Below, piece after piece: positions 1 to 48,245 of a stretch of DNA of 64,000 nucleotides. This stretch comes from Bigelowiella natans CCMP2755. Its lineage: Eukaryota > Protista > Cercozoa. Both the position numbers and the translations under genes were made by a program. Location: NCBI GenBank assembly GCA_000320545.1, contig ADNK01000742.1, positions 25,580-89,579 on the forward strand. Reading direction: 5' to 3'. How positions within the stretch are numbered: the stretch's first letter is position 1; the number at the start of each line of letters is the position of its first letter. The notes beneath the pieces were generated by a model. The model was given only the letters and a program-made list of their open reading frames with translations, was not told the DNA's origin and did not search any database.

Positions 1-2745
1 AGTGCCACTTTCCCACCTTTCCGGATGTTTTCCTGTCGTCGTTCCTTTGACGACAGGAAAGCGCGGACAGATTTGTTCCGACCTTCCTTTTGCATTGAAC
101 AAAGGAAGGTGCAAACGAACATCCTTTCCTTTTTTTGAGCAAAGGAAGGATGAACAGAAGGCAGTTGTTTTGCAAATCAAGGGGGGGTTGGGGATTGCCT
201 TCACTTCTCTTTCCTTTCCCCTCCCCCCCTCTCGTCCCTTGCATTCCCCTTTCGTGTTTTTGCGGGTGTGTGGATGTTTTTGTGACACTTTTCTCTTTTT
301 GCGGATTGACCGCCTGTGTTCTTTCGGGTTTTGCTTCGTTTTCATGGGGATCAACCCCATTTTGAGAAAACAAAATGGTGCTTGATGCACAAAGCTTGTT
401 TTTCATGAATTCGCTTTTCGAATTTTCGATTTTTTCGTGACCGAAATTGATTCGGTGCCAAGTTTGCAAATTGGGGAGGCGGATGGCTGCTCTTCGTGAG
501 AGCTTTCCTCCTCGTGATCGTGGCGTCAGCTGCCACGAGTGATGCATTCTGACATCAGTGGTGCAGATGCAGTTGACGGTGAAGCGGATGGCTGCACTTC
601 CGTTCGGTTCGTGAGCAGAACGAGCGGAAGGTCCGAGCATGCATCGCCACTCACCGTGCAACTTGAGCATTGCAGCTGGTTGTGCAGGATCATCGTGGCA
701 GGCCCTGCCCTGAGCCACCGAATCGAACTGCACGTGCGTTGCAGTGAGTTCGATTCCGGAGCTGTTGTGCATTGCACAAAGCAACGGGAGGTTTTTGCGG
801 CCATTGGCGCTTCCTGCCCATGCATGCATTGCATGCATTCAAACTTGCAGCTCGACCACGAGTGAGTGCAAGCTTCCAATGGCGGCAACGCATGTGGTGG
901 CCTGCTTGGTTGACGAGGCATCACATGCGCAGCATCGTGCATCGGTTTGCCCGTTGTGGAAACGTGCATGTGTGCATGCGCGTCAGTCAATTTGCCAGTT
1001 TGGGAGGCGTGTTGATGCTCCCACGTTCGCGCAAGTTTGACATGCATGTGGTCGACATGCAAGCGAGCATGAACCGAGGAAATTGGCAAATCAACTGTGC
1101 ACGTTGTGGCAGGTGAAGCGGCACAAGTGCGACAAGCATTGCCTTGGCACTTCAGCCTGCCGCGACAAGGAATGCACACACACACACGTCGCGCGACAAG
1201 GATCAGCCTTGTCGCGGCCCAGAAATGCAATGAAATCATGTTTGTTCTCTGACAAGCTTGACCTCCATGAAAGGGCGGTCAAGCACACGCATGACTTCAT
1301 CACAGTTCAACCTGAACACCGCTGCCCACTCGTTTGCCACCTTTTGCTCACTGCGCGCACATCGCACCGCACCCAACCGTTCAATGATGGAGGATGTTTT
1401 GGAGCAGTTTGGGGACTTGGATGTTCGTGATGGCCGACGGGTTGCAAAACACGTCTTGCACTGCGACGGCATCGATGAAAACGTGGATGACTTGGTCAAA
1501 ACGATGACCAATGACTTGGAATCGCGGGAGTTTGCACTTCATCGTTGCATGGATGAAGGGGCAACTTTGCGAACTTGGGCCTGCATGCTCAAGAAAAGTG
1601 GAGACCCGGACCATGCTCCACCAGGCACGCTGGAGACGAAGGAGCGGAAGGCCAAGCAGCAGCCTTCAGTCCGGGATGTTGCGGGCGCCATCGACTCGTT
1701 TCAAGAAAAAGAAAGAAGAAACAACATCCAGGGAAACCAGCACACACACGTCGCACCAGGGGCAGGGTTGCAGCAGCTAGGGCTGCGACCTCTTCTTCTA
1801 GCAGCAGCAGCAGCAAGTAGCATTGTCATGTTCACAGTGTCATCATCGATTTCGACATCTCATCAACTCTGCAAGGAGATCATTGTTGCTTGATTTTTTC
1901 ATGTCACATGTGCACATGCTGAGCTGTTGGCGCACGCAGCAAGCAACGCGCAGTGGCTCATGTCGGCTGCTGATTGGCATTGTGCAAGTGCCAACATGCC
2001 AGAAAGTGTTGCGCTACATTGCAGAAGCTTGCAGATTCACAATGTCTTCACTGTCCACGTGTGTTGCAATTCATTGCAAATTTGCAGTGTGTTGCATTTC
2101 ACACTCAAACATTGCAAATTTGCAATGTTCTCAATCGTCATCTTGCCAGAGTGATGTGTGCATGCATGGTCATCACCCGCCTGTCTCTTGCATGTGCACC
2201 AGTGCGCACTGTCATCTGAGCACGCGCACATGCGTGCAGCATGCAGCTGCGGTAGTTTGATCACATCGGCAATTGCTTGCACACACCCAGACTTCACACA
2301 CGCGGTGGCCTCGATCATCGATGGTGCGTCACATTTGCTTGAGTTGATGACGGATCAGCAGGCCCCATTTTTGCAGATGACGACTTTCCATGAAAAATCC
2401 AGCGCGTTCAGCATTTCAATTCTTTTTTCATGCGGACGTCGGCATTCGCTTGCTCTGCATCTGCTGATTGTCCATCTTTGTGGAACAACACAGGCTTTGA
2501 AAATTGAAAGAGCTGAGACAAATGCTGAATTTTCATGAAAGTGTGGCGGGAACTCTCGTTTCATGTGATGCAAAAATGATCAAAATGCTTGCACAAGTCC
2601 CCCAAAACTCAAGCTACGCAGGCGCAGGAGAAGCGAATGTCAAAGTCCGCGTGAAAAAAAAATGAAAATTCGTGGTGCTGGCACATTGCAAAGTCGCTAT
2701 TGCTCAGGATCAGAGGGAATGGGGGCTGCTGATCCGTCATCAACT
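1..2745. other. TpA-depleted island (hypermutated gene-like or repeat sequence); runs off the window start
   Basis: No TA dinucleotide found by eye in 1-1777. Only 7 in 1778-2745, all in CTA or TAG context. TG/CA are abundant and CpG is retained. Normal TA frequency resumes at about 2749. Confidence 0.9.
1258..1893 (+). pseudogene. Degraded gene-like ORF inside the TpA-free island, product unknown
   Basis: The 211-aa ORF has no Tyr. Its core (RVAKHVLHCDGIDENVDDLVKTMTNDLESREFALHRCMDEG) reads as ordinary globular protein if some H/C/M are reverted to Y/Y/I. No family recognised. Confidence 0.35.
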
Positions 2746-3069
2746 CCTTATTACGTCGCACAATATTTGTGCGATCCCATTGAGGTATTAGATACGATGG
2801 ACCATGTTACAGTTTGAGCATACTGGCGCCTCTACTAATAAAGATGCTTGCATTTTTGTCCATTTATCACTGCTTCGCTACTCTCAGCCGTGGACTTTAT
2901 GTGTGGCTCGCATGTTGTGTTCAACCCCACAAATTAGAATACATTGTGCCTTCAACGGTTCCATGCATAGCACAGCTTCACAGTGTAAGAAAACTTTATT
3001 AATATGAGTTTCTGACTGGCGCGCATTTACCATGCATACCATGTACAAATATTTCCATCATTTAGGAGA

Positions 3070-3472
3070 GGGTATGAGCTACTTTTGCAAGATTCAGTGT
3101 GGATGATTTCGATGATCCCGTTGAAGAGGATGCGGGGGAGAAGTTCATTTGGCTATTTGCATCCATTTCTATCAGTATGAAAAAATTTTAGTTAAGTGCG
3201 CATGTACAGCGCGCGTAAAAGCAGCAAAAAGTACACACTGAACTACACACACTTGTGTTTTCTTTTACTATGCATATTAACACAGGCTACTGCTACTACT
3301 ACTACTACTAGTACTACTACTACGACTACTACAACTACTATTCTATTTCTACTACTTTTACTACTTTTATCTCCGCAGGGGCAGCACTGGTTTGTCGCAT
3401 CGCCTTTGTGGTAATGCCTGGGGGCATAATGGTGTCAGGATGTGAGACAGACTGGTCAAAGTATTGTTCGGC

Positions 3473-9110: not shown

Positions 9111-9309
9111 TTTCGTATAGAGGGAGTTAGACATTAATTAAGGCATATGAGTTTGTGCTCGATCTTAGCATAGCTCGATATTCGGTCACATCTAGACATT
9201 GCGACATCGCATCTTGCCGTTCATGCGTAAGAGACAAAGTATATACTAAAGCACATACGTGTCTCTAACTTGAATATCCCATGAAACACATCAGTGCTAG
9301 CACTATTAC

Positions 9310-9695
9310 CACAACACACAAGTGCACATGCATCCATGAATGATGCACATGCACTTGAAAGGGATTCTAGTACGTGCACAAAAGTGAGAGACAGAGTGTG
9401 TGCTAAAGCATGTGCGTGTCTCTGCTAACATCAACATGTGCATCGCACATCTGGACATGGCTTGACATGCTTTGTTCATGTGAGGCACAATGACGCGCAG
9501 CGTTGTTCTTTGATGCCATGGCCGGCACAGCTAACCCGCTTTGCGCATGCATGCATGTCTACAGCTAGATGTGCTCAGAACAGAACATGCATTGCAAAGA
9601 ACAGGTGTGAAAACTGCACGTGTTCGCATGCGCACGTGCGTGCGCCATGCGTAGCCCATGTGGGGCCATCTAGGAAACGAGCATGTGTGTGTGCA
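9310..9695. other. TpA-depleted island containing a diverged local duplication
   Basis: 9 TAs, 8 of them in CTA/TAG context. 9384-9423 is a copy of 9227-9266 that differs only by A/G and T/C transitions. Confidence 0.8.
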
Positions 9696-14556: not shown

Positions 14557-14761
14557 TAATTCATATATCTATTTATGTATGTGTGAGAAGGTCCAAATAC
14601 CTTTGAAAGAATGTACACTATTAACGCGCACGAATTATTAAGACGTTCACGCTCAAACATGCCGTGCGTTTTCACCACTGTCGTCAACCTAATGCCGCTA
14701 TGCAGCATCTGTTTGCATTTGTCCTAACAAACAAACACACAACAACAGTCTGTTCGTGTTA

Positions 14762-15048
14762 TCACATGATTTCGATCGTTGTGGATCCATGTCAGCAGTG
14801 CGACTTGTTCGCAAGGCACGTGCATGCGTGCATGGCAGCATGACACTAGCATGTGTGCGCCCTCACAACGTGTGTGCACACATGCTTGTTGCCTGAGCAT
14901 GCCCGTCACCACTTCATGCTCTCATTGCCATCATTGTCATTGTCATCATTCATCATCGTTTTCATCATTGACGCTCATTCAAATGAACACAGTTCCTGCA
15001 CAATGATCGACGATGATGACACTGTGAGTTGATGGGATGCACACACTG

Positions 15049-15082
<34 letters not shown>

Positions 15083-15830
15083 TTCGTTTGCAAGGAAAAC
15101 ATTTTGTTGAACTTGCGTGTCTAAAGATCTTGTTCTTCCAAGGATCTGAGCACGTGTGCGTGCAGCGCAGCGCTGATTCAAAGCTTCTGAATTCGTTTGA
15201 TGTCCTCATCAACAGCGGTTTGGATCGATTCGCTGTCAACCGCACCTGTGATGGCTGCTCTCTAGGAGCGAGGATGGATTCACAACGTGGACCACATGAG
15301 TTCATCCGATCATGTTGTTTAGGTGAAAAAAAACTGCTGCTTCACAGTGGCAATGTCTGCTCACACAGTGATGATGGTGGCCCAAAGTTCAACCACCAGC
15401 CGCTTCCATCGAGGTTGTTGATGACACAACTTTGCACAGCACGATGAATGGACATCCTTGAATGAATGAACAACTTGAAAGAATGAATGAATGAAACGGT
15501 TCCACAGGAACGGTTGAAAGGATCACAGGATCACAGGTCACGCCAATGCCGAACAATGAACAATGATGACAAACTGCACTTCCAAAGTGTTGCAAGACAT
15601 TTGCAGTGTGCGAAACGCAGTGCCTCGAACTAACTTCAGTGAGACCTAACTAGTGAAACCAGAAGGAATTCAAGAACAACATTCTAGCCATTCCTGAGGG
15701 CTACATCTAATCGACGGAAGACGATCACGGTCTCGGCCCCGGTCGCGAGCACTGAGTGAACTTGGCATCGGGCCGCACCCTTTTTAGGAAAAAATGACCA
15801 CCAAATCTTTTCCAGATGTTGTCGCAGATG
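14762..15830. other. TpA-depleted island with intron-like content
   Basis: All 11 TAs counted are in CTA/TAG context. It contains a (CA)n tract, tcat/atga low-complexity runs and a gtgagt donor-like site at about 15024. Confidence 0.85.
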
Positions 15831-18014: not shown

Positions 18015-18520
18015 CCATCGAAGCTGGGAACCTCTCCAAGCTAGCAAGGCTAGGGACATCAAGGTCCGTGGTCGATGGACCACGAGTTCCATCGGTGAAG
18101 GCTTGAGGAGGAAAACAAAGCGCTCATCATGCAAAAAACATGGCACACATGGTGCTTTCCGATCCGTCAAACAATCATTTAACACTCGTCGCGTTCATCG
18201 AAGAACTACCATGCCATTTTTACTCGATTGACGATTACGATTTTCTGGCGCTACAACATGTGCATGTTCATGGGACGGATGCAATGGATTGATTGAACAT
18301 TTTCAACACAAACGTCATCTCAATCTAGCAATGTAGCTATGCAATGATGTTGCAGCAGCCGTGAAAACATGTTCCCAGCGGCTGCCCAGCGCTCATGCTG
18401 CATGTTCCATCTGATTGTTTTCCGCTGTTGCATCTTCGATTCATGCACGCAATGCAAAGACATTCATGCACGTCGCCTCGCACGCGGCGAGAAGTGGGTC
18501 CTGTGACACAATTCTTTTTT
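18015..18520. other. Small TpA-depleted island
   Basis: 18241-18520 has 4 TAs, all CTA/TAG. 18015-18178 has only two, both CTAG. Confidence 0.65.
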
Positions 18521-18749
18521 TGTGTATTTTTAACATATTCTGCGATACCTATTGATATATTCTCGTTACTGCATTGACTCTTTCGTGAGAAGTAGTACTT
18601 AAACTCTCTTCATCATACATGCTCCCTGTCTTAGGTTTCTGCAGAACTCTATATCAGAGGAAGCACCGCATGCTGCTTCATTAGGAGGTGCAACCTTCAT
18701 TTCGTTGCCTTCCAAGAGGGTACTACCAAGAGAAGCTAAGTTTGAATCT

Positions 18750-21700
18750 ACTGCTGGCGTTTGGTTTCTTGCGATTTTGTTTCAACATTATCAAGATCCC
18801 GGCGTCCTTCCGGAGCATCAAAGCCCTATATTGCCATCAAATCGCGCGGTTATGAACAAATAGTAATCCCCCCCCCCCCCCCAAACCGTATTATAAGAAT
18901 GAATTGAAGGCGGGGTTTAATCATATCTCAGATGAAATAAAAAATGATGACTCGTTCTGCGAGATTCCATCATATACGACCAAAAACGTTCTCATCAAAA
19001 GAAAACTTGACATTGCTAGCACCGCTCTTCATAGTGGACCTCCCACTTCTCCTGTCTAAGTTTCCCTCTTTTGTTGTACCTCCTGTTCAATCGATGACGT
19101 CGATTTATTTGGAAGTGAAAATGAAGCATTGAATCCAAAACCACTGTTGCTTACAGAGCCGTCTTCTCCGGATTTCTTATCATCCATTTCTACACACGTA
19201 TATAATAATGCGTGGCGCATTTTTCAGCATTATTACAGTATAACAGGTGCGCTCTAAAATGAAGTTGTCCAAGACGAAGCAAAGGGAGCTGCTACCTACT
19301 TTAATTACCATGTCTACTTCACCTAACTACTCCTTCTAATAAACTAATGCACTGAAAAGCGCACACGAGCACACACATCCCTCTACCTGGCACCGTGTTA
19401 TCGCCGGAAGATTCCACTTTCGGAAGCTCAGATATCTCTCCAGACGGTGATTTGGTAGGCTTTTCGTTCACGATAGTTACGGCTGGCAAATCTTGACTAA
19501 ATTATATGTAAATATGTTATTATGTCTAGTTGCGAAACTGCACGGCAAGTTCATTTATGGTGATGTGTCACAGATTGCATTCGTATTCTAAGAGAGGCCT
19601 CACCCGCAGGCCAGCAATGACATTATTAATGTTTGTGCATCAGCAAATCTGTCTACATATTTTGAATATTCTTGTGAATCTTTTGCTAACGATTCTAGAT
19701 TTCGAACTCCTCCTTCCTAATCTTACATTATGAGTAGTACCTCGTTGCAGAGGATAATATGTTTTTGGGCATCTTCAGCTGGTGCTGGGGGTTGTCGCCG
19801 TCAACACTGCGTGGTGTCTCCGCTTCTTTCTTAGTATCCTGATCTCTAGAACTATCTGAACCATTGTTGTTGCGTGCATGTCGTCTTGACCTTGGATTTC
19901 TCGGAGACACTCCATCTGCTTCTCCTCCGTCGTGCTGCCTATTTTCTCTAGACCTCGATCGAGATCGAGATCTGTCTCTGACAATCACATTTGGGGCAGG
20001 TTTCCAGCGCCCACCTTCTGCAACCGTTGACTGCAACCTGTCAGCGTATTCAATGGGAACCCGTAGTGGCAACGACAGAACGCTCAACATCAGCCATCGG
20101 AGCTTCTGCCTCGAGCCTTCCTCGTTCTTGTGGAAACGATTCAGCGCCAAGAACTTGCGATAGTCAGGCTTTGTAATGTTGAGGTTGAAGAAACGGTGCA
20201 TCACGAAGGACCATTCGCTCATGTAGCGTGCCTCCCAGAATCGCGAGTGTTTCTTGTGGCGCAGTACAGTCCGGCGAAGCGTGTGGAGAAGTATAACATC
20301 GAAGCCTAGTGTTTCGTCCTTCTTTTTCTCTTCTTTGCCCTTCTTGAGGTTGATCTTTTTCTTCACTTCCTCACGTTTCTTAGCTTCGTGCGACATAGAA
20401 CCCTTGCTCATACTCATACTATGAGCAGTGAATTTTGAGTTGGATTTGGTATCAGCACCTTCTTGGCCAGCAGCAGCTCCCTTCGATTTATCTGCCTCAG
20501 GTTCCACGATTTCATGAAGCACGCCCAAGTCCATTTTGCCCAAGTCCATCTCAGTTGATCGCTTGCGATCATGGTGCTTGACTATGGCGGCCTTGAGGTC
20601 TATGCTGAATACGTAGGCATTTCCTTGATCGTCAGTCACAATGAGGCTTTTGGAAGGGTTTGGACGGGGGATGTGCATCTTTGTTATATTAATAGGACGC
20701 TTTCGATTGTCCAGTTCTTGCGCAATCTCGCCGTGTTCTGTCAGCAATGGTGCCTTTGAGAGCTTGAACCATTCAACAGCCTCAAAGGTTCGTCCCTATT
20801 GCATTCAGAACATAGGAAAATGTTACACACGTAGGAAAAGAAGTGATGGAGGAAGGCGGAAAGGAAGAGGAGGAGGAAGAGGAGGAGGAAGGGGAGGAGG
20901 AGGAAATTTCTCTCGACGTGCACGACGACCTTCTATCACAAGTTAACAACTTGCGTAATGGTAGAACACATACACAACATTATCTCATCATCATCATCAT
21001 TTTTCTACACCTGATAATCTTTAGAGTCCGCAAGGCGATGTCCTTCGAAGTGATTGGACTTACCTCCTTCTTTCATGATGACTGGCTTCACGGTATACGT
21101 ATCATGTATTTTAAGCGTACCGACGTTCGCAGCATCTTTATCGTCAACTGGCTCTGATGCCTTTTGGACCTTTTTGATCTGAACAAGTAAGCCATGCCCC
21201 TTGCCCGGTCCATCGGGTGCAATCATCACCGCCCGATCGCCGACGAAGAAAGTGTTTTGTAGGTAGTGTCGTATTGAACGAACGTTAATTGTCTGTAGAA
21301 TCTTCATTCCATCTCGCAGAGAAATGACGGCTATGGTCCCCATAGTAAGCACGAAGCAGATGCTTTGGTGCTGTTCCTTGTAAGGAAGAAATTGGAGAAT
21401 CTTCCGGCCAAGCTGCAGCTGCTTCGACCCTTGTCTGTTAGGGGCTATTCGAGACTCAGCTCCCATAGAGTATATCTGTGGTCGGATCGACCCATCGTCA
21501 GTCCCTGCTAATATAACGAGATCCTTCTCCTTCGTAGCATTAACATCATCGAACATGTGCGTGACGGTGGTAATCACAGACACAAAATCATCGAAAGTCT
21601 CCCGATGAACTGCCCGACGTAGCACACCCATCGGAGACCCGTTCTCGTCCAGTTCGAGGCGCATTGGCGAGATATCAAAGGTGTGAAGCTTGCTCTTGCC

Positions 21701-24700
21701 GTCACTCTCTGTGTACACTGCTAAGATTGTGGGCCAACGGCGGCGCTCAATGAGATGTAGGCCGGAGATCTTGGAATCGAACGGCTTCATGTAGAAGGGA
21801 TCAAATATTAAAGGTACCGAGTTCCTTTCTTCACCCCAAACAACTTCAAAAAGACATACCTGGCCGTCCTCGCCTGCTGTAACGACTAATGAGCCTTTCC
21901 ACTTGGATTTAGGGCGAGGATTAGAGATATGCATGTGGGTTACACTTCCCTCGTGCACTGGATAGTCGACCTCAATGTCGTCTAGTTCGGGCCATACCAT
22001 AATCCCTTCCATGTTCCAAAACCGAACACGGCCATCCGTTGCGCCAGATACGACATAGGATTGGTCATCAAGGCCGTGAACAAACCCGATACAGGAAACC
22101 GAGACCTTTGCATCCTCGCGTGTCTCTAGGTGGCCGGTCCACTGGGCAGAATTCCCTAAGGGAACATCCCAAGCGTGAATAGATCCATCGATGCTCGCGC
22201 CAACAACGTATCGCTTGTCCCGTGAAATTGCAACATCGTTCATGTGCTCTATCTTGGGCTTCGAAGGCTGTTTCTTTTTCTTTTTTGGCTTCTGTGGTTC
22301 TAGTGGGGAACCAGGGCCGAAGTCTAAGGTTTCTGATTTAAGCTTATCATCGAACAATATGTCTTCAATTATGTTTCCTTCGTTGTCCTTGGCATCGCCA
22401 TCATCCTCAAATCTCACCTTAATCCGATTCGTTTTGTCATTATCCAAGGTACTGCTTACATTGTCGTCGTTCAATATGTTTTCGACGGCCTTTTCATCCT
22501 CTTGATCAATACCACTACCCTTACTACGACTATTTTGCTTGGGAGGGGTGTGATCTTCGCCCAGCTCGTTTGGTTTCTCGGCAGGGGTTTGGAGAGGCTG
22601 TTTCTGCTCTTCTTCCGCTATTGCTCCTAGTTCCTTCATCAAGACGGGTGTTTTGGAGTTCTCCGCGTATTCGATATCACTCACTCTCTTAATCTCCTCG
22701 TTGGCTGACTTCGTGACACTATAATGAACAAGTCCGCCCCTTTTCTTTCCACCCCAACCGTCGATAGTCACGAAACCCTGTGACTTCTGGTCCGCGCTCG
22801 GGTTTAAGAATAGCAGAGGAGCTGTCCTGAACTTAGCCATGACTTTAGAATCTGACTGTTGGAGATATTCCCATATTCTTTTCCGCCTGCAATCGGAGAC
22901 AAGGAAGGGTGAGATTCCTGTGCAATGGGCCTGTGAGACTCCTAGAATCTCCTCGAAACACGACTGACACATCTGCTGGATGCGACGAGCGAACTGTACT
23001 TTGTCTCTCATTGGCGTGTTATCATCATCAATCCACGCATTCGCGAAGATAACGCCAAGATCAGAGAGGATCGGGGATTTCGATATCATATTCCGCACAC
23101 TCATCTGAGCCCTGTCCATCGCTCTGCGGATGGAAATTTTGGCGAGGTTTTGGCGCTCTTCTAATGCCTTTAAGTTATCAATGTTGACAGTTGCTCCTGC
23201 CTTTTCAAATTTCTTTTCTTTGATGGATGTCAATCCGGCCCCGCCTACGTTGAGACTAACGGACTCACTCCCTATGCCTCTCTGAGACTCAGCACGCGAT
23301 GACGATGACAATAATCGTTTCTTTTCGTCTTCCTCCTCATCATCATCATCGCCATCACCTCGGCCACCAACTTGAGCTCCGGGGCCGTGTTTAGTATCAG
23401 AAGTATTGATACTTAAAGGATGTTGAATATCTTCTTCACTCATTTTGGAATCAGGTTCATTGGCATTTTCCTTTCCAGTACCATCATCTTTCTCGTCTTC
23501 TTTCCCCTGTGATTTAGTTGCTGGATCATCGACGACTTTCTTATCCGTGTCTCCTGTGAGGAAAACAGAGTTGAACATTGACCTCCATGATGAGCCTTCT
23601 TTTTCTCCCTCCTCTTTCTTCTGCTCATCCTTTGTTTCATCTTTCTTTTCCTCGATTTTCTCGCTCTCGTCTTTTCCTGCATTCACCTCGCCTTTGTTCG
23701 AGTCGTCTTCTTTGTTTTCCTTACCTTCTTCTTTCTCCTTTGGTTTAGCGGATAAATCATCGTCGCCTCCAGTGGAGGCGGAAGCAGGAGAATTCTCATT
23801 CTCGCCTTTGTTCGAGTCGTCTTCTTCGGTGATATTCTTACTTTCCTTACCGTCCTCCTTGTCCACAGAAATCCCATTTTCGCTCTTTTCTCTGTCCTCC
23901 TTTGATTCGCCATCCATATTTTTATCGCCGCCATCGTCGGTTGACTTGCTTTCTTTCGCATTGTCCTTTTTCTCCTCCTCTTCTTTCCTGTCGTGACTCG
24001 TAGTCTTGTCGGTTATTTCTCCTTCCGAACTCACTTTTCCCTCTTTATCTTCTTCTCTTTTGTCCTCTGATATCTCCTCATTTTTCTCTGGGATCGTTGG
24101 GGGAGGTCGCTTTTTGGTAGTTTGTGAGAGGGAAGATGTTGCTATCATGGGCTTTGACGCCTTCGACATCTCTGGATGCTTCTTAAAGTCGTCCAAATTT
24201 ATACCGGGACTACTTATGGCCGTGTTAGATATGTAATTCTTTGTCTTTTTCTTTGTAAAGCGCGGGGCGCTTGGCTCCGAATCCTCATCGCACCAGTCAA
24301 CGCAGCAGCAACATTCCCCTCTATGTCCATCAATGTCCCTCTCTTTTGAGCAGCATCCGCCAGGTTCGCAGTGCTCCTTCTTGCAAACTAGAGCCATCCA
24401 TACGTTGGCTTGTGAGAATTTTCTTCTCTCAAGAGCCCACATGTGCTGACAGTACTTGAATCGGAGGATCGTTTTGATGACAGGAACGGTGTCATGCAAT
24501 TCGTCCCACACGGAGATGAAAATGTAGGAACCGGTTGCAGTAATCGTCAGAATCACAGCAAAAGCAATGACTGTAGCAAGCTCCCCGTCTATCGGAAGCT
24601 CTTCTGTCAAAAACACTGTACCTATAAAAAGCACGACGATATGGTTCCAAAGTGCAGCGGACTCGATCTCGTTGAGTTCCGACTCCACAAACGGGTTGAA

Positions 24701-27700
24701 GTAGAATTGCGCAAAAGTTGCGAAACAGAAGACCAGAAAGGCGCCTGTGACTTGCACGAATTTGGTATCCTCGAGAGAGAATAGCACGCGGAACAATTCG
24801 AGCATGAATTTGCGGAACAATACAGCGAACTCCCAGTACCAAAACTGGTTTGCATATTTTAAATATATGTAGCCATACTTGGACTTGTTGTCAGGGTGAT
24901 ACAACCCTTTCTCTCCGAGCACGCCGTCGCCATACACCATCGCGATGAGAAAACCCGGGATCCCAAGACCCCAAATTATCAGAAATATCAGTGAAAATGT
25001 GACTAGAGTCCAATGCTGCCCCTCCCAGCATACAATCTCTTGGTCCGCCTGGAGAAACTCTTTATTGCCCACGGCTTTGATGCATACAAAGATCTCTAGG
25101 GCGCCACCAACGAGCACGAGATGCGAGAAGAGAAGACACATACAAAGAGCATTGATCACCATGAACCAGGAGGCCTGGATCTTTGCCCGAATTTTGTCCT
25201 GCGTCTCATCGCTATCATCATCAACACCATCCACGCGTTGCTTCTCGAACATCTCTAAGATCTGGTTGCTCAGGTTTTTGAAGAGCTCTGAATCCTTGTC
25301 CTTGGTCAAAATGAAGTTGTTGGCCATGAACTTGTGGAACTGTGGCGAGTACATCCACATGATCCCGCCGCTATGCGTCTTTAGAGCTAGTTTCTTCCAC
25401 TTCTCAATCTGCTGGGCCTGGTGTTCCTCCTCCATTTCAAGTCGCACCTCCGCTTTACTTTTTATGATGGTAAAATCATCGGCGGCGACCTCCGTGTCTT
25501 TCTTCTCCTGATCAAACATCCTCCGTTGCTCTTCTTGTGTAGCGGCGCGGCCTTGAACATATAGGTCCTCATCCATTTGGCACTCCAGAAAAGCTAACCA
25601 CTGAGATTCATCATGGCCAATGTGGATATCCTGATTCAGCTTCACATAAGCACGGTCGAACGCGCTGAGGCCCTTCTTCCGATAACCAACCTTTTCTGTG
25701 TCTTTCTGATCGTCCTGGTCAAAATGCTTTGGAGGTGCGAAAATCTCTAGGATTCCTTTGCACAACATGCAGGCGCCGCGGTAGGTCTGCTGAACAAACT
25801 TCACAATGCAGATGAACGTGAATAAAAATGCCACGAAAATCATCATGAAGAATATCCTTGGAATTGAGATGAAAGTCCGTAATACGTTGCCTACCAAACA
25901 AAACAGGGAAGAAAATGAAGACTGATTCAACTTTCCTAATGGTACAAACACAACTCCCATACCAACCACCACAGCCGCACAAAATACTACGATTGATTGA
26001 TGCTCAATTAGTTGTCGGCATTTACCAGCGTAGAAGAGCCAGACAGAATCAAGGCACTTCTCCCACCACTTCTGTTCCTTCTTGACTTTGATGTCCCTCG
26101 TCAACTTGTTCTGGCGCCAAATCTTACAGTGACCGTCACACCAAATAATCCCGAAGATTCCCATTAGTACCGCAATGAGCACCAATGGCGTCAACTGCAG
26201 CAAGAGAAAGGACCACAGGTACGGTATATCGACTTGGCATTCGGGCTGGGCAAAATCGATGTTGATCGAGATGAAATTGAGAGAATTGTAGAAATTCACC
26301 ACTGCGGGAGGCCATGTGATCGAAAAGTGGTTGAAGGACGCCGAAGCGGATATGAAATTCATCCATATACGTGTTGACCCAAGGCCCTTCAGATAAGGCG
26401 CGAACAGATAGAATCCGTACAGGAAAGCAATTGCGAGAATTCCTGCGAATACTAGCAGAGATATGTCGGTCGGAGGGCACTGCGCACATAGGGCTCCTGT
26501 ATATTATAGTTGAAACATATCAATCACCGTCAGCTTATCAGAGACGATGTTGGAATTCAATATTCAGTGTTATGTGTTACTTATGTACCGTCGCGAAAGT
26601 GGTTTTTGGCACATTTAGCGCACTTGCTGCCCGTGTACTTGGAGCTGCACCAGTTATTCACATCGATTCCTCCTTGACAGGCCTCCTCAGGAGAGCACTC
26701 GTAGAAGATCTGGCTGTCACCATCCTCAAGACGATAGTAGCCAGTACCTGGATAAGGAACTACGGGGATCCCTTGGTAGTTGCTACCAGGGCAAATGGCT
26801 CCAGCCGGGCAAGCAGTGCAGCATGGATTCGTATAGGGCACCCCGTTCAAACTGCACGTTTTGGTCGAGTCGAAGTAGGCCTGAGGGGAGCATGTACAGT
26901 TCTCGATGGCAACCGCCCGCGTCAAAAGAGTCGCGGGGTCAGGATTGAGCTGGTCATTTAGCGAGGAGGCTGCTAGAGCAGCCCATGGATACTCCTCTTG
27001 CGTGGTGGAAAGCTCAGGGCAGGTTTTGCATGCAGCCTGACCGGTCTCATCCTGATACAGGCCTGCTTGACAATCTGAGCACACACGCGTACCCGCTGTT
27101 GCACTAAAGGTGCCCAAGGGGCACGGCTGGCACGTCAGGTAGTAGTAACTTGCATATTGGCCGGCGGGACATGCCTCCGACTGGATTGTGAAAGAGGATT
27201 CTGCAGAGTTTTGATCCGAGAAGTAGTTGGTCACTACGTTGGTGGTCTCGCCGTTAAATGTGACGTAAACCTGGTAGGTGTACCCCGTAGGCCTTGCTGG
27301 TGCAGGGCAGATCATCTCCGTCTGTGAGACGATAATTGCCGACGTACGTGCCATTAACTGATAGCAAGTAACGGAACCGTCTATGCAATTATCCTGTCCG
27401 CTTTCAAGTACGGTCACACCTGAAGTGGTGTACGTTCCGACCACTAAGCTGCGGTCAAGCACAGCTGTTCCAATCGTTGTTCCAGAATCTGCAGGATCTT
27501 CGGATTTGAACGCGAAGAGGCAGTAGGCAAGGGATGTGGTTGTATAATACGTGAAGAAATTTTGTCCCGTGAGGGTTACGTTCATATCGCCAGCCTCTGG
27601 AGTCCGCGTCTCTGCACCATCAAGAGTTATGGTCGAGATGTACGGCCTGGCGTGCACGCCAAAGACAAACGTCCCGTCGGAGGCAAAATTTTCGCCGTCA

Positions 27701-29128
27701 AGAGAGATCTGAAAGTATACTAAGCGGTTGGCAGTTCCGTTGAGATAGTATGGCGGAGTTGTACAAACGGCGCCTTGGTCATCACATGTCGGTGCGTCGT
27801 TGCATGTGCAGGTGAAGTACACTGTCGGGCCTTCCCCCGCCACACGGGGAGCGAGTCTGATAATGGGAGATATTCCGTAAAGACTCGACGCGGAAATTGT
27901 AACCTGGGTGTTGCCCCACTCAGGCTGCACCTCGGGAGAGATAGACAGCTGCGAAAAGACGCCATATACGCTTAGCGTGGCCGGGTTAGGGGAGTACTGC
28001 TGTCCGTTCATTGCAACTTCTATCTTGATAACATCGCCCGATGTAATGGTAGAGCTTGTAAGAGTTGGTGCGTCAATTTCGATGTTCCATTCTTCACCAC
28101 AAACCGTGCCACTGCAGAGAGAAGCCCGTGGTACGATGTATTCCACGTCAATGTTGTTCCAGGGGTAGTTGGTGGAGAGAATGTTCGTGGTGGAGGATTT
28201 GTACGTCTTGACGCATGCTGCGGACATAGTTTGTCGGTACCCGAAGGCACCTGTTCCAGAATAAGGCACTGTATTGGTTACTCGGAATTGCAACACCAAG
28301 CTGTGACTTGACGTAAGAATGGTAGAGACATCGATTGGCGTAGAGAGAGTGAACTCGTTCCATCCTGTCGTGAATACGTGACCCGGGGAGGAGAAGACAA
28401 CCTGAAAGACGGTTGGATCCTGGTAGGTAATTTTGCGCGCCGTCGTAGAGTACGATGTGATCACGCTTCCTGTCTGGGTCAGGTAACCGATTTCGAATGT
28501 AGTTGGAGCGGTTTCTGGCACTCGGTCCACGTAGATCTTGAGCTTGGTAACCGAGGAATATATGCACTGAGTGCTCGCCGTGGAGGCACAAAAGCCACGC
28601 GAAAGAAGCTCAGTGTACGAGTATGTCGCGTGAAAGATCACGTCTTCAAGTCCTCCCAGGGGATAACCTTGTCCAATATAGAGAGTATCAACGATCGCGT
28701 TATCACTGTACATCTCGGACACTGACGTGGACGTTCCAACCACGGTCTGCTCAAAGGTTTTCACTCCCGCATTGTCCGAGTACCGCACCGTTATCTGTGA
28801 CGAGTCGAAGAGATTGGCTCCGCTCAGCTTGTACCGCACCTGGGCCGCTCCCACGCTCTGAATTTGCGGGATGGCCGTCACCGAGGACACGAGACTGCTG
28901 GGCTCATTGTAAAAATAAAACTGCTCAGTAGTAACTGTTGCCGCCCCGCAAATATGGATCGTCCGATAGCTGCTCACCGTCACGGGAGGAGTTGTGCAGA
29001 GAATCGTTGTACTACGAAACGATACAATATGAAGAGCACAAAGATGAAGAAAATTCAGAAGAAGAAGATAACGATAACAATAACAAACACTATTCCAACT
29101 TCTTTCTATCACTTAATGCATATTAAAC

Positions 29129-29169
<41 letters not shown>

Positions 29170-29823
29170 CACATTGCTCTCGATACTTTTACCTGTTGAC
29201 TAATGTCGCTGCCGTAGAGGCGTTTCCTTGTGAGCCCCCAAAAAGACACGTCAAGACGTTCGCATTGGTAAAGTTGGTGCCATACACTTGGACGTTTGTC
29301 CCGCCGGTAACCGGGCCCGAGGAAGGGTAGAATCCGGTTACCGTGATACCGAGGCCACGCGAAGCAGGTGCTATTCTCACGTGCAGTTCATCAATAGCGA
29401 ATGTCCCAAGATTATTGCTACCATCATCGGCCTGGTAAAAGCGAAATTTGGTGTAGGATCCCTGAGCAAGGGATGGGACGGCGGTCGACACGTAAGTCCA
29501 GACAAACGTAGCTCCAGTAGAACCCAGGGTGTAGAAGGTCGTCCAAGTCACATCATCATGCGTATACTGTAGCTCAACGTACTTTGTCGCACCGATTGGA
29601 CCGCTACACAACGCCTCACCCCCGTATCTGAAGTAGAAATCAATGCTGCCGCCGAGGGTTGTATCGAGCGTCTCTGTTGCTAGAATTCGGTCCCCGCTGT
29701 TTGGTGTGTTGAACGAATGAGCGCAACATGATGGTGATGGCCATGTGGGGTGATTTCGACAGCAGTAAAATTCAATGTAATAACATAGTAACCTCCCCCT
29801 CCCACCCCCCCACGCATACACAC

Positions 29824-29862
<39 letters not shown>

Positions 29863-32800
29863 TGATATATACTGTATGTACTATATCGAAATATTTGCTA
29901 TTGGAGAAGCCCTACCTATTCGAAAATTCGAGCGATTGAGTGGATCCGGATGGCGCTGACGCGGACGCCGAGGTAATGCAAGTCGTACCCAAAGAACCCG
30001 TGTTGGTTTGAAACTGGTAGCTCCTCACAGTAGTCTGAAAGTCGTCTGATATTACCTTGCAAGTCTCAATCGTGGTCACCGTGAAATTAGCGCTTCCTGG
30101 AGCTGCAGCGTACTGCTGACCGTTGAGCGATACCTCGATCGACAGAGCCCCAGATGCTACTTGTTGTCCGGAACTGAGAAGGACCGGCAGCACAAACTGG
30201 AATTTAGTGTACGTCGTTGTAGTAGATGCTGCAGCGGTAACGCTAAGGCTATAGTCGTACTCGATTGTTGGTGAGGCAATTGTAGAAGAAGAAGCAGTGG
30301 TTACATCAGCGGGTCGTGCGGAGAGGGAGTTTGTGTCGCCGATATTAGTAGCTTCAGCGTACCTAAATTCCGTCTCCGAAAGAGCAAATCGAACGTAGAT
30401 CACTGACTGATTAATGTAGCTAGTCCAAATTGTGATGGTCGTTTCTTCATCAGGATATGCGGACGTTGGGGACACCTGTTGGACGCTCGGGGCCGAATAC
30501 GTCTGCAGCGATACGGCTCCTTGCGAGTTGTACTGCTGCCCGTTCAGCGCGACCTCGATCGTGAACGAAGTCGAGTTGGTTGTGTTGTCTCCAAGTGCGC
30601 TAGGAGTTTCGGATAGAATGAGTTCCATCTCCTTTGACTCAGGGCCCAAGCTGACTTCAACGTCGGAGCTCGACGAAGAAATAGCTGCTTGCGCATGGAT
30701 ATAGTCGAATTCACCTCCCGCATTAATAGAACCAATGAAAACGTAATAGTTGGCAGCACCGATAACAGCAGTTGATAGAGGACCACAGGTATCGCTGGAA
30801 TCCAGGCCCGTTCCAGTGATCGTCATGCCGAAGCTCGAATTGACGTAGATCGAGAATCTGTCGACGTTGAGGCTGCACGACACGCAGCTTGGACCAACGC
30901 AAAGTTGCGTATTGTTCACGTACAGCATACCCGAGGCACCAGCGGTCGGGCGTGTAGTTCCGCGAGTGGAGCTCAAATAGACAAACTGCTGCGCCCCAGC
31001 TGTGCGGATGATACGGAAGTCAATTATGGTGTTCGCCAGGAACTCAAAGTTGCTCCGAGTTGCGACACGCGTTGAGCTCAAAGCGTATCCGAATCGGAGG
31101 CGGCTGTTTGTGTACGATATTTCGGACACGCTTACGTTCTCTGGCTGCACATACGACCAGAAGGTATAGTTCTCGGCAGAAAGCTCATCAAAGATTGCAA
31201 ACGCGTGTTCAGGACCGAAGGAGTTTGTCAGGTTGCCATCTCCATAGTACAAGTGGTAGAAACTCGTCGCCGAAGCTGAGATAGAGGCTCGAAACCACAG
31301 CCTCGTGTTCTCTGTGTTGCAGCTGCTTTCTTCCAAGTACAGCGGATACTCTTTGAGCGAGTTAAATTCTGCAGAGAAAAGTTTAATATCGGAACAGTCG
31401 GCTTTGAGCTGCCCTGCTGAGATCCAAGCCTTCGAGCTGAACACAATCGCGACCGGGTGGTCAACGACCGCCACGGTCAATGCATTCGTGACGTTCACAT
31501 TGCGCTTGTACTGTGGCGAATGTGTGTTGTTTGAAACGAAGCCTCCCATTCGTACACTCACTTCCTGGACTCCATTCAGGGCGGTGTCCGTCATATTCCT
31601 GCCAAAGACAGCGAGTTCAAGTTGCGCACCGCTTTGTGAGGCGACGGAAGAGTCGGCAAGGGCAGTTGATGGGTATAACGCCAACACTGTTGGCGTCTCA
31701 TAGTACGTGTAATCCATAGCTGAAGCCGTGTAAATGATCTCTTGATTAAAGGATGTGTCCATTGTAACATTGGCAGTCTCCTCCCGCTTTGCGGTTAGAG
31801 TTTCGTTGAGACTGGGCGAGGAGCAAAGCAACTCACTCGCACTAACGTAGACGCAGGAAGGCGATGCTAGAGGGCCAACCATACCTTTAATTCCACGCGT
31901 GGGGAAGAATCCACTCCCAATGACACGGAAGCTTGTGTTCCCTGGATGGAATAATATCATTGAATTCAGCATTTGACGCAACTGTAGGAAATCTATGTGG
32001 CAAAAATTGCGTATATTTTCTAGTAGGGGCTCTAGCCCTCCTCCCGACGAGGAATAGATGCGATGTAACAAAAAGAAAAATATGGAGATACAACGGAGAA
32101 ATTCCGCCCATTTTCATCGACATAAACTAGAGAAGTTCTTTAATTCAATTTTATTGTGCTGCAGCATTGTTATCTATTGCAAACGATCGACCAACCTGTA
32201 TCAGGCCCACTGTGTGGAATCAGCTCCGTTACTACTGGAAAGTCGTAGTACTGAAACGGGGTCGTGGCGGGAGAATACTGCTGAGCATTCAACGAGACGC
32301 TAAGAGAAATATTAGCTTCCACCGAAAAGCTGGATGTATTGAATGTAATCGCAGTTGAATTTAGAAGAGTTGCAGTGGTTGTCGCTTGGTTGGAGCTCCC
32401 ATCCGCGAGGACGCTGTAAAGACTAGCCCCAGAGAGATTTTGGAACCCTATTTTTTTTTAATGACAACGTAATGTATATATAGCCCGTCAGTGAATAATA
32501 GATCTATCTACCAATCGGTCAGTCAGTCAGTCAATCAGGTAAAGCAGGCGTGCAAGCACTTACTATTAACAATCAATCAACATTCTTTTTTGGCTACAGA
32601 GAGAGAGAGAAAAAGTATGTAGTGTGAGTGGGTAAATACCGCTCCCATGAAGTGTAACCGTCATGCCTCCTCGTATGGGTCCATATGGATCGACAAGAGC
32701 TTCTATTTGAGGATGAGAGTAGCGATGGAAACTGGGAAGAGGAGAAAGGGAGGGGGAGGAAAGAAGACCGAAATCAGGACGTAAATGCATATGATAACGC

Positions 32801-32980
32801 GCAACATCTCTTCATACCCCCCTCTCCTCCTTCAAAATAGAAATTACAGCATAAATGCATCGACTCATGGACGCACGAATGCACGGATGCACACACATGC
32901 TGGCACACATACACGTATGTCCAATCGTGTGTGCATGCGCAAGTGTTTATCCTATGAGCCAATGGTTACTACAACAACCA

Positions 32981-33032
<52 letters not shown>

Positions 33033-36000: not shown

Positions 36001-36405
36001 TGTTCGTGCTCCCTGATACTGGTCCGAGAGGCGGAGACAGCACGGATACGTTAGGGGCAGCGTACGCCTGGAATTGAACACCACTTGAGGAGTACACCGC
36101 ATTCGTGGTGAGTATAGAAGTGTCATCGTTTGAGATCTCAAGGGCTCCGGTTGAGACACCTTCTGGTGAAACACAAAGTACTTGTGTGCACACGGGAGCT
36201 GCGGCGTCGGCTGACGATCCAGGATCAGTACAACTAGAAGCCAAAAGAGAGCAGTTACTGGATGAGAGAGAATTGAACGTTCCCAAGGCGATGCCCGTAT
36301 TGTAGAAAGTACCTGCAAGATAGTTGGTTGGATTTGCATATTTAGCAGCACGCGAGGTCGATTGATTTGGTTGGGAAAATTCAACTTCACACATGCATCC
36401 CGAAG

Positions 36406-36442
<37 letters not shown>

Positions 36443-46800: not shown

Positions 46801-46989
46801 TCAGTAGTCAACATCTGTTGTCACCGCCCTCTTCGTTTAAAACGATGAGCAATGACGGTATCGGAGAGGAGGTGACGGCTAACAGCGATGTGGGGAGGGG
46901 GGAAGGATGGAATTGGAAGCAGCAAGTTGGTCAACGACGCCCATCTGTCCCTTGCAATTGTCGCCGGGGTTGTTGTGATTTGTTGCTAA

Positions 46990-47815
46990 AACTGTTGCAA
47001 AATGATGCACATGAATCACGAAGAAACATCCTGATTTTTGAATGAATTTTGCGAGAGGATTTCGTCCAAACCCAAACCAGCAAGGCTTTTTCCCTGTGGG
47101 CTGCTGCTTGCAAGTGCATGTCTCCCGTGTGTTTCCCGATTTCGTGCACTGCAAGCATCGTGCAACACTTTGGAAGTGCAGTTTTAATGTAGTTTTTCAT
47201 CATTGTTTCATTGTTTCATTGTTTCATCATTGTTCGTTGTTCCCGACCGTGGACCTGTGTTGCAGGGCAGGTGCAGTGGCGCACAGGGCTAGCAACAGGT
47301 GACTCTGGGTTTTCAGTCACGAGGGTGGCTTTTCCTCCTTCCCATCCCTGAACCAGCGTGTGCGGCACCATCGAACCAAGCACAGCAAGTGCCAATTTCA
47401 GCGAGGCCCACGTCTGCATCTGCAAGTCACACCACTTGCTAGCTCACCAGCTTGGCCTCACGCACGTGCAATGTTGTCCAGCATCACACTTGCAAGTCCA
47501 CACCTGACTGCGGACAACCACCTTCACTCTTGTTGTGGCTGATCACTGTGACACGTGCGCGTCTGAACCTGAACGATGATGCACTTGCACACACGCACGC
47601 CATTCCAGCATTGTGTCACAGCGTGGATGACAATGATGGCGTGCGCCATGGAGCATGGGCAGCAAGCAGCACCGCAGCACCAACAGAATGAGAGTGACAG
47701 CTAGACGACCTCCCAAGCTCCGTCTAACTGTTCCATGTGCATGCATGATGATGATGATGATGATGATGATGACAAAGATGAAGCAATTTCATGCGCTCCA
47801 GTGCTTCCATGCTTC
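46990..47815. other. TpA-depleted island between the SelO 3' end and the pirin 5' end
   Basis: 6 TAs in about 825 bp, 5 of them CTA/TAG. Runs such as tcattgtttcattgtttcatt resemble converted ttatt low-complexity DNA. Confidence 0.85.
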
Positions 47816-48245
47816 GTGTAATTCATTGTTGACGGTTCTCGCGCAATGATTCTGCAAAGTTTACATCTAGCGAAGCACCATTTTGTTACCATCTAGAATT
47901 GTTCATCGTTTGATTCGTCGTAACACCATCTTGTCGTGTCCATTGCAGACACATCTCCATACAATAAAACCCCCGATCGTGTGTCAGGTTTCACTCCATT
48001 GTATATCAGTGTCGATGATGCATGTGTTATTTTTGTACTCGCTCACTGACTACCATACCATGCTCTGGAATGCAGTCAACGGCAGTGCAATAGCGACGAA
48101 ACAACAAATAATGAGCCTAGATAATATTTTTTCTAGCAAAGGCGGCAGGACAGTGGAGAAGAACGTCTCTATTGAGTTATTAAGAAAAACAAAGCAGAGA
48201 TTAAATCCACCTCGGTTCCCCTAATGAAAGACATTATCCTATCGC

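What the first reader, a model, noticed from the sequence alone, without database searches (positions are those of the whole stretch)
1..2745. TpA-free islands: a candidate region-targeted TpA-to-TpG/CpA hypermutation system (an inverse of RIP)
Seen: zero TA in 1-1777 by manual scan, where roughly 100 would be expected at near-even composition. Four more sharply bounded islands show the same pattern (9310-9695, 14762-15830, 18015-18520, 46990-47815), while flanking DNA is TA-rich and includes long (TA)n tracts. CpG is abundant in the islands, so 5mC deamination does not explain them. Established: fungal RIP runs the other way (CpA to TpA). Inference: a process converts A to G at TpA on both strands over kb-scale tracts. 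Candidate mechanisms are a DNA adenine deaminase (TadA-like enzymes favour TA), error-prone Pol-eta-type WA-to-WG synthesis, or a modified adenine. It may act as a genome-defence system against duplicated DNA. I do not know of a description of this system, but I cannot search the literature.
Basis: partly seen in the sequence, partly recalled or inferred. Interest (0 to 1): 0.92.

Follow-up and report, generated by a model that had tools for sequence, protein, structure and literature searches.

The report
TpA-erased transposon remnants in Bigelowiella
The TA-free stretches are real: they are old mobile-element DNA in the alga Bigelowiella natans in which nearly every TA was converted to TG or CA, by a targeted hypermutation process that a 2026 preprint has already demonstrated experimentally in this species.

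Summary
There is no TA in 1-1777 (about 98 expected, P about 1e-43), and 1-2745 holds 7 TA against about 163 expected. CA and TG are in excess and CpG is normal. Smaller islands lie at 14728-15622, 46883-47818, 9310-9649 and 18340-18524.

The window is Bigelowiella natans nuclear DNA, because named JGI Bigna1 gene models map to it at 97-100% identity.

bioRxiv 10.64898/2026.01.13.699255 shows by mutation accumulation that B. natans mutates TpA to TpG or CpA in integrated viral DNA, and it maps genome-wide TpA-poor clusters.

- Island 1 carries a gag fragment (1348-1704) of a Ty3/gypsy-like LTR retrotransposon family.
- One family copy has normal tyrosine content. At least four others, including this one, have none. 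Every Tyr became His, Cys or Arg, with different outcomes in different copies.
- The island's right edge falls within 4 bp of the end of a 406-bp inverted-repeat element.
- 23 of 26 surviving TAs sit in CTA or TAG contexts, and the preprint's own mutation table shows TAG is hit less than half as often as expected. ADAR prefers the opposite.

The enzyme remains unknown. Other readers of this scan noted the same signature on other pieces of this genome.

The parts
1..2745 (.). TpA-erased island 1, cut by the window start so it probably continues upstream. It holds 7 TA against about 163 expected, 277 TG and 276 CA, and is 51% GC.
1..1777 (.). Completely TA-free core of island 1 (0 TA, about 98 expected).
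1348..1704 (+). Fragment homologous to the N-terminal gag region of a B. natans Ty3/gypsy-like LTR retrotransposon. It is 70% identical to residues 67-172 of P0028 and 77% to residues 52-173 of P0030. All four Tyr of P0028 in this stretch are Arg, His, Cys and His here.
1384..1893 (+). Predicted 169-aa ORF, present in EukProt as P0024. It has no tyrosine. Only its first 107 codons are homologous to the retrotransposon gag.
2341..2746 (.). 406-bp inverted-repeat element, MITE-like. Outer arms 2341-2369 and 2718-2746 are 29 nt and 97% complementary. Inner arms 2413-2464 and 2618-2669 are 52 nt and 77% complementary. CTT flanks both ends. The outer end coincides with the island's right edge. Only 2 TA remain inside.
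9310..9649 (.). Island 2, weak (7 TA, 21 expected). The in-island copy 9384-9423 of a 40-bp direct repeat has TG wherever the outside copy 9227-9266 has TA, except at a CTA.
14728..15622 (.). Island 3 (5 TA, 63 expected). Origin unknown, with no Pfam domain.
18340..18524 (.). Island 4, short (0 TA, 10.6 expected). It has a sharp right edge and lies just beyond the 3' end of the large minus-strand gene.
46883..47818 (.). Island 5 (7 TA, 55 expected). Origin unknown, with no Pfam domain.

Best explanation
The islands are footprints of the endogenous, locus-targeted TpA-to-TpG/CpA hypermutation of Bigelowiella natans, acting in place on integrated mobile DNA. In island 1 the substrate was a fragment of a Ty3/gypsy-like LTR retrotransposon (gag), together with an adjacent 406-bp inverted-repeat element and unidentified flanking sequence. 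The process changes the A:T pair of a TpA step to G:C on either strand with about equal probability, so each TA becomes TG or CA. It works less well when the TA is part of TAG/CTA. It stops abruptly at element boundaries, and given time it removes every TA, which also removes all Tyr codons and all TAA/TAG stops. Shown: the signature, its direction, its independence in different copies, its context bias, and (from the preprint) that it happens de novo in integrated DNA. Inferred: that it serves as a defence against mobile or foreign DNA, that targeting is guided by chromatin or small RNA, and that the chemical step is enzymatic deamination of adenine in DNA.
For: The window is B. natans. EukProt/JGI Bigna1 models aug1.13_g5917 and aug1.204_g22274 map to 26584-32731 and 18653-21934 at 97-100% identity. 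TA is erased with matching CA/TG excess and unchanged CpG. In the preprint's mutation-accumulation experiment, 210 of 211 de novo mutations in an integrated NCLDV were A>G or T>C, nearly all at TpA, at about 1000 times the background rate. The preprint also reports 124 TpA-poor clusters and enrichment of RT and DDE domains among TpA-poor genes. The island ORF is homologous to gag of a retrotransposon family. A relative has the order CCCH zinc fingers, RT, RNase H, integrase. The family copy P0028 has 3.7% Tyr, whereas P0030, P0031, P0025, P0026 and the window copy have none. From P0028 to P0030, all 31 aligned Tyr become Cys (14), His (12), Arg (4) or Asp (1). The next commonest changes (K>E, V>A, I>V, M>V, T>A, L>S) are those expected from TA>TG/CA. 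An outgroup, P0032, has Tyr at 6 of these positions. At the same ancestral Tyr, different copies carry His or Cys, which indicates independent hits. P0025, P0030 and P0031 appear in the preprint's lists of TpA-poor genes and P0028 does not. In the window copy, 7 of 8 inferred A>G changes follow a T. In the 40-bp duplication, five TA in the outside copy correspond to TG in the island copy. Of 26 surviving TAs, 23 are CTA/TAG (Fisher P = 6e-8). TAG half-sites make up 9.7% of the preprint's de novo hits against 21% of background TAs (P = 2e-5). TG and CA are intermixed, with no strand-specific patches.
Against: No raw reads, methylation, small-RNA or mutation-accumulation data could be examined for this locus, so current activity here is unknown. 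Only about 360 bp of the 2.7-kb island could be assigned to a known element. Islands 2-5 have no identified origin, so 'mobile DNA' is an extrapolation for them. The paralogue polarisation is at protein level, because no DNA of the other copies could be fetched. The background for the TAG test comes from this window and not from the NCLDV region. Within the preprint's table, TAG (3) and CTA (17) are oddly unequal (P = 0.01). 1-1777 has lost every TA including the TAG-type ones, so the protection is relative. The enzyme is unidentified.
Confidence: 0.85

Rival explanations
1. The signature arose at RNA level. Retrotransposon transcripts were hyper-edited by an ADAR-like enzyme (A to I at UA), then reverse transcribed and integrated as TA-poor copies.
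For: A retrotransposon fragment lies in island 1. ADARs prefer a 5' U (as stated in the preprint).
Against: TA>TG and TA>CA are equally common on the same strand: 277 TG against 276 CA, and 14 Tyr>Cys against 12 Tyr>His. Editing of one RNA strand would give only one of the two. The erasure also covers a non-retroelement inverted-repeat unit and stops at its end. The preprint sees the mutations arise in integrated DNA of a giant virus and a virophage. ADARs favour the UAG triplet (PMC2532740), whereas TAG is the spared context here.
Confidence: 0.03
2. The chemistry is not adenine deamination. Instead there is a thymine-directed step (for example hydroxylation or another modification of T in TpA that mispairs with G), or targeted error-prone repair synthesis (Pol eta-type WA>WG). 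The biological targeting is the same.
For: The change is strand-symmetric, so A>G on one strand cannot be told apart from T>C on the other. No deaminase has been shown to act, and the preprint's ADAT2 candidate rests on homology alone.
Against: Pol eta's WA motif includes AA, but 206 of 211 de novo events are at TA. The islands keep normal AA content (observed/expected 1.28 in 1-1777). Nothing in the data argues specifically against a thymine-directed route.
Confidence: 0.25
3. The TA-poor tracts reflect composition or selection rather than mutation. For example, the DNA was acquired from a TA-poor donor, or TA was selected against (transposon target sites, UA-cleaving nucleases).
For: TA is mildly under-represented across the whole window (observed/expected 0.75).
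Against: A copy of the same element with normal TA content exists in the same genome, and an outgroup confirms Tyr as ancestral. Different copies carry different replacements at the same site. Non-coding parts are erased equally. De novo events are seen in the laboratory.
Confidence: 0.02
4. The tracts are an assembly or sequencing artefact.
For: None was found.
Against: Tyr-free proteins of the family occur in independent gene models on four scaffolds and in an MMETSP transcript. The preprint re-sequenced the strain with Illumina reads and found the same regions.
Confidence: 0.01

Closest known systems
TpA hypermutation of integrated foreign DNA in Bigelowiella natans (Mettrop et al., bioRxiv 10.64898/2026.01.13.699255)
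   Same: It is the same organism, the same TpA>TpG/CpA signature and the same regional confinement. The association with reverse-transcriptase and transposase-type genes is the same, and three paralogues of the island's gene are in that paper's lists of TpA-poor genes.
   Different: The preprint centres on a 186-kb giant-virus insert and a virophage, and on clusters of at least 3 kb. Here the substrate is an LTR-retrotransposon remnant plus a MITE-like element, the erasure is complete over 1.8 kb, and four islands are shorter than 1 kb, below that paper's resolution. The flanking-base bias (TAG spared), the independent outcomes in different copies and the element-sharp edge are not discussed there.
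Repeat-induced point mutation (RIP) of fungi
   Same: Both are dinucleotide-specific transition hypermutation confined to mobile or foreign DNA, and both destroy coding capacity.
   Different: RIP runs the opposite way (C>T at CpA, which creates TpA). It requires duplicated sequence and acts before meiosis. Here a single-copy virus is targeted and a family copy with normal TA content coexists with erased ones.
ADAR hyper-editing (A-to-I on double-stranded RNA)
   Same: Both give an A>G outcome with a preference for a 5' U/T.
   Different: ADAR acts on RNA and favours UAG (PMC2532740). Here integrated DNA is changed in place, both strands are hit equally, and TAG is the least affected context.
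APOBEC3/AID cytosine deamination of viral and retroelement DNA
   Same: Both involve host-driven hypermutation of invading nucleic acid as a defence.
   Different: APOBEC3/AID gives C>U on single-stranded DNA with strand-coordinated clusters. Here the change is at A:T pairs, and TG and CA are intermixed without strand patches.
tRNA adenosine-34 deaminases TadA and ADAT2/ADAT3 (the source of adenine base editors)
   Same: Their natural target A34 always follows U33, which is a UA context (established knowledge). The preprint proposes the B. natans ADAT2 homologue as a candidate.
   Different: There is no evidence that it acts on DNA in this alga. ADAT2/3 substrates include UAG-type anticodon loops (established knowledge), so the sparing of TAG is not predicted.

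Membership tests
B. natans TpA hypermutation footprint (preprint 10.64898/2026.01.13.699255) | The sequence is from the Bigelowiella natans nuclear genome. | tested here: met
   Named Bigna1 models map to the window at 97-100% identity.
B. natans TpA hypermutation footprint (preprint 10.64898/2026.01.13.699255) | 1-kb windows have Rho(TA) <= 0.43 and Rho(CA+TG) >= 1.52, with at least 3 consecutive windows forming a 'cluster'. | tested here: inconclusive
   1001-2000 and 2001-3000 pass. 1-1000 has Rho(TA) 0 but Rho(CA+TG) 1.42. The island is cut by the window start, so the run length is unknown. 47001-48000 passes alone.
B. natans TpA hypermutation footprint (preprint 10.64898/2026.01.13.699255) | The direction of change is TA>TG/CA and not the reverse. 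| tested here: met
   Tyr becomes His, Cys or Arg against a copy with normal TA content and an outgroup. Codon-level changes agree, as does the 40-bp duplication.
B. natans TpA hypermutation footprint (preprint 10.64898/2026.01.13.699255) | The target is of foreign or mobile origin. | tested here: met
   Met for 1348-1704 (retrotransposon gag) and suggested for 2341-2746 (inverted-repeat element). Not established for the rest of island 1 or for islands 2-5.
B. natans TpA hypermutation footprint (preprint 10.64898/2026.01.13.699255) | An elevated de novo mutation rate at the locus. | not testable with these tools
   This needs the mutation-accumulation read data mapped to this locus. With almost no TA left, little further change is expected.
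Fungal RIP | C>T transitions at CpA that enrich TpA. | tested here: not met
   TpA is erased and CpA is enriched, which is the opposite.
ADAR-type editing footprint | Preference for a 3' G (UAG) and a single edited strand per molecule. | tested here: not met
   TAG is spared and TG and CA are about equal on one strand. ADAR's UAG preference is from PMC2532740.
Ty3/gypsy-type LTR retrotransposon (for 1348-1704) | Homology to a gag-pol polyprotein with the order RT, RNase H, integrase. | tested here: met
   The window fragment matches P0028 and P0030 (E = 6e-41 and 2e-50). P0030 has RVT_1 and RT_RNaseH_2. The relative P0032 has zf-CCCH at 61-114, RVT_1 at 565-687, RNase H at 756-873 and Integrase_H2C2 at 1044-1102.
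Ty3/gypsy-type LTR retrotransposon (for 1348-1704) | Flanking long terminal repeats, a primer-binding site and target-site duplication. | tested here: not met
   No long direct repeats are present in 1-3200. Homology is limited to about 360 bp, so this is a fragment and not an element.

The most novel reading that the evidence does not exclude
The hypermutator may recognise a self-complementary D-T-A-H step in double-stranded DNA. It may be directed to individual inserted elements with base-pair-sharp limits by a homology- or chromatin-based guide, hitting each copy independently after insertion. That would make it a natural, targetable A:T-to-G:C DNA editor. Its flanking-base preference (TAG spared) matches neither ADAR nor the tRNA A34 deaminases proposed so far, so the enzyme would be of a new kind.
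Probability: 0.3. Interest if true: 0.85.

Novelty: already known. Interest (0 to 1): 0.45.

Why it matters
A eukaryote that erases one dinucleotide from invading DNA through A:T>G:C transitions is a new type of genome defence, and it may hold a natural DNA adenine (or thymine) editor. The phenomenon itself was reported in 2026, so the value of this locus is as clean supporting material. It shows that retrotransposons are substrates, that erasure can run to completion (no Tyr codons, no TAA/TAG stops), and that copies are hit independently. It also shows that the limits can coincide with the end of an element, and that TAG/CTA is a poor target. The last point constrains which enzyme can be responsible, and it can be tested in vitro.

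Tried and rejected
- Fetching DNA of the window's genes or of the paralogues by exact protein look-up failed, so nucleotide-level alignment of paralogues was not possible.
- A metagenome scan with the gag alignment found no relative.
- Pfam scans of 26 ORFs from the islands gave no credible domain.
- The islands do not look like copies of one another, in ordinary BLAST or after collapsing transitions to purine/pyrimidine. The only match, 15571-15615 against 47140-47184, is low-complexity.
- A runs test for strand-coordinated patches of TG against CA was negative. In island 1 they alternate slightly more than chance (z = +2.3 to +2.6).
- Rfam found nothing in the window.
- I considered whether surviving CTA/TAG could be new TAs made by C>T at CAG/CTG. 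This cannot be excluded for the survivors, but it does not explain the deficit of TAG among de novo hits, and the CTA in the 40-bp duplication is retained in both copies.
- The window may abut the preprint's scaffold_13 706,000-724,000 cluster, but coordinates could not be matched.
Full report
**1. The observation**

A dinucleotide count in 250-bp steps and a list of TA-free gaps show no TpA at all in 1-1777. Base composition predicts about 98 (Poisson P about 2e-43), and none of 2000 shuffles had fewer than 72. 1778-2745 holds 7 TA (observed/expected 0.11). In 1-1777 CA is at 1.62 and TG at 1.40 times expectation. CpG is at 0.89, the same as the whole window (0.90).

A two-state HMM over all TA/TG/CA sites gives these islands:

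| Island | Coordinates | TA observed | TA expected |
|---|---|---|---|
| 1 | 3-2742 | 7 | 163 |
| 2 | 9310-9649 | 7 | 21 |
| 3 | 14728-15622 | 5 | 63 |
| 4 | 18340-18524 | 0 | 10.6 |
| 5 | 46883-47818 | 7 | 55 |

It also picks up one (AC)n/(TG)n microsatellite. The flanks are ordinary rather than TA-rich. The right edge of island 1 is abrupt, with TAs at normal density from 2749.

**2. The organism**

The window is eukaryotic, with many microsatellites and intron-containing genes; SelO exons are visible on the minus strand. The 1785-aa ORF at 21005-26362 is itself in the protein collection (P0009). Its cluster holds EukProt entries EP00466_Bigelowiella_natans, namely JGI Bigna1 131209 (aug1.13_g5917) and 147566 (aug1.204_g22274). 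By tblastn these map to 26584-32731 and 18653-21934 at 97-100% identity. The window is therefore B. natans nuclear DNA, probably scaffold_13 of Bigna1 or its equivalent.

**3. What is already known**

A full-text search found bioRxiv 10.64898/2026.01.13.699255 (Mettrop et al., version of April 2026).
- In 15 mutation-accumulation lines of B. natans, 231 of 302 nuclear point mutations fell in an integrated giant virus (scaffold_10) and a virophage (scaffold_146), at about 1000 times the background rate.
- These mutations were almost exclusively A>G or T>C at TpA.
- The authors found 324 TpA-poor predicted genes, enriched for reverse transcriptase, endonuclease-RT, DDE transposase and a zinc-finger domain.
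- They found 124 clusters of at least 3 kb that are TpA-poor and CA+TG-rich, including one at scaffold_13 706,000-724,000.
- They propose a defence against foreign DNA and an ADAT2-like adenine deaminase as a candidate.

The preprint does not discuss wider sequence context.

**4. What island 1 is**

Pfam found nothing in the island's ORFs. An exhaustive HMMER search with the ORF at 1267-1893 returned four hits:
- the window's own 169-aa model, P0024;
- P0025 (87% identical; Bigna1 69966, scaffold_10);
- P0026 (73%; an MMETSP transcript);
- P0027 (68%). Its 90% cluster contains P0028 (Bigna1 130375, scaffold_11, 892 aa).

P0028 has two CCCH zinc fingers. Searching its C-terminal part found P0030 (Bigna1 147227, 1151 aa), P0031 (Bigna1 139163) and an environmental relative, P0032. 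P0032 has the order zf-CCCH, RVT_1, RNase H, Integrase_H2C2, and P0030 has RVT_1 and RT_RNaseH_2. This is a Ty3/gypsy-type LTR retrotransposon family.

The window matches only residues 52-173 of the polyprotein, at 1348-1704. There are no LTR-like direct repeats, so this is a fragment. The rest of island 1 could not be assigned, except for a 406-bp inverted-repeat unit at 2341-2746. Its arms are 29 nt and 97% complementary, a second inner pair is present, and CTT lies on both sides. Its outer end lies within 4 bp of the island's edge.

**5. Polarising the changes**

P0028 has 3.7% tyrosine and the outgroup P0032 has 3.1%. P0030, P0031, P0025, P0026 and the window's P0024 have none. Tyr codons need TA.
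- Aligning P0028 with P0030 (867 positions, 76% identity), all 31 Tyr are replaced: Cys 14 (TAY>TGY), His 12 (TAY>CAY), Arg 4 and Asp 1.
- The next commonest changes are K>E, V>A, I>V, M>V, T>A and L>S. These are the ones produced by TA>TG/CA inside codons or across codon boundaries.
- Where P0028 and the outgroup both have Tyr, P0030 has Cys, His or Arg.
- P0025, P0030 and P0031 are in the preprint's lists of TpA-poor genes and P0028 is not.
- In the five-way alignment the same ancestral Tyr is His in one copy and Cys in another at four of five positions. The copies were therefore hit independently and did not descend from one erased master.
- In the window copy, 7 of 8 inferred A>G changes follow a T and 5 of 9 T>C changes precede an A.
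- The 40-bp direct repeat at 9227-9266 (outside island 2) and 9384-9423 (inside) differs at eight positions. Five are TA outside against TG inside. Two form a CA/TG pair that implies an ancestral TA. One is a non-TpA A>G. A CTA is kept in both copies.

Near-equal numbers of TG and CA (277 and 276) and of Tyr>Cys and Tyr>His show that both strands are hit alike. There are no strand-specific patches.

**6. Flanking context**

Of the 26 TAs that survive inside the islands, 23 have a 5' C or a 3' G and 9 are CTAG. In the rest of the window the figures are 36% and 3.7% (Fisher P = 6e-8).

I tallied by hand the trinucleotide column of the preprint's Table S2 for scaffold_10:

| Change | Context counts |
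|---|---|
| A>G | TAT 34, TAA 32, TAC 22, TAG 3 |
| T>C | TTA 35, ATA 33, GTA 30, CTA 17 |
| T>C outside TpA | 4 |
| C>T | 1 |

Collapsing strands, TAG-type half-sites are 9.7% of hits against 21% of background TAs in this window (P = 2e-5). TAG is thus hit at less than half the expected rate. This is probably an underestimate, because the partly depleted virus should be enriched in resistant sites.

There are caveats. The baseline is not from the virus itself. TAG (3) and CTA (17) are unequal (P = 0.01). 1-1777 has lost even its TAG-type TAs, so the protection is relative.

ADARs favour UAG (PMC2532740), so this bias argues against an ADAR-like catalytic preference. tRNA A34 deaminases accept UAG-type loops (established knowledge), so they do not predict it either.

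**7. Mechanism**

Shown:
- Integrated DNA is changed in place (preprint).
- The change is at TpA, on both strands, in sharply bounded tracts.
- It is repeated independently on different copies of a retrotransposon.
- It can run to completion.

From the preprint's numbers (206 TpA hits, 6169 TpA, 3132 generations) the mean rate is about 1e-5 per TpA per generation. About 4e5 generations would erase 98 TAs. This is a rough inference, roughly a thousand years at one division a day.

Inferred: a defence function, a guide that defines the tract, and adenine deamination as the chemical step. A thymine-directed route cannot be excluded, because the outcome is strand-symmetric. Pol eta-type WA errors fit poorly, since AA is untouched.

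**8. Verdict**

The feature is real and striking. It belongs to a phenomenon already reported for this species in a 2026 preprint, so it is classed as already known.
- the retrotransposon identity of part of island 1;
- the protein-level polarisation and the independence of hits in different copies;
- the edge that coincides with the end of an element;
- sub-kb islands below the preprint's resolution;
- the sparing of TAG/CTA.

Other first-stage notes report the same signature on at least eight other pieces of this genome. None had been followed up.

Noticed in passing
window 18653-38224, minus strand: What looks like five separate ORFs (WD40, ephrin-receptor-like, DUF2341, two TIG/IPT-repeat ORFs) is joined into single 5649-5720-aa products in two JGI/IMG records (P0019, P0023). 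These align across all of them with introns removed. The (AT)n tracts at 29129-29165 and 29827-29871 lie in the introns. The Bigna1 models split this into several genes, so it is probably one giant surface-type protein gene.
   Followed up: partly
P0027 and P0029 (EukProt, labelled Prorocentrum lima): Two proteins labelled as from the dinoflagellate Prorocentrum lima sit in the same 90%-identity cluster as the B. natans retrotransposon polyprotein P0028. This looks like cross-contamination of transcriptome data rather than shared elements.
   Followed up: no
window 48200-53500, minus strand: Exons of a SelO-like gene are visible in the ORF translations (for example around 50893-51192, 49342-49560 and 52880-53035). 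Another note of the scan reports a selenocysteine at its C-terminus.
   Followed up: no
preprint Table S2: Four of the 210 A>G or T>C mutations listed for scaffold_10 have trinucleotides ATG or ATT (positions 402688, 416158, 431449, 450385). By the table's own column they are not at TpA, although the text says all are.
   Followed up: no
P0026 (MMETSP transcript): A Tyr-free, hypermutated copy of the retrotransposon gag is present in a transcriptome, so at least some erased copies are still transcribed.
   Followed up: no
window 40831-40945 and other (TA)n tracts: Long (TA)n microsatellites (up to 58 units) persist in ordinary DNA a few kb from erased islands. The process is therefore not genome-wide. 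Tracts such as GTGTGTGC (9396-9403) and the CA run at 1173-1190 may be former (TA)n inside targeted DNA.
   Followed up: partly
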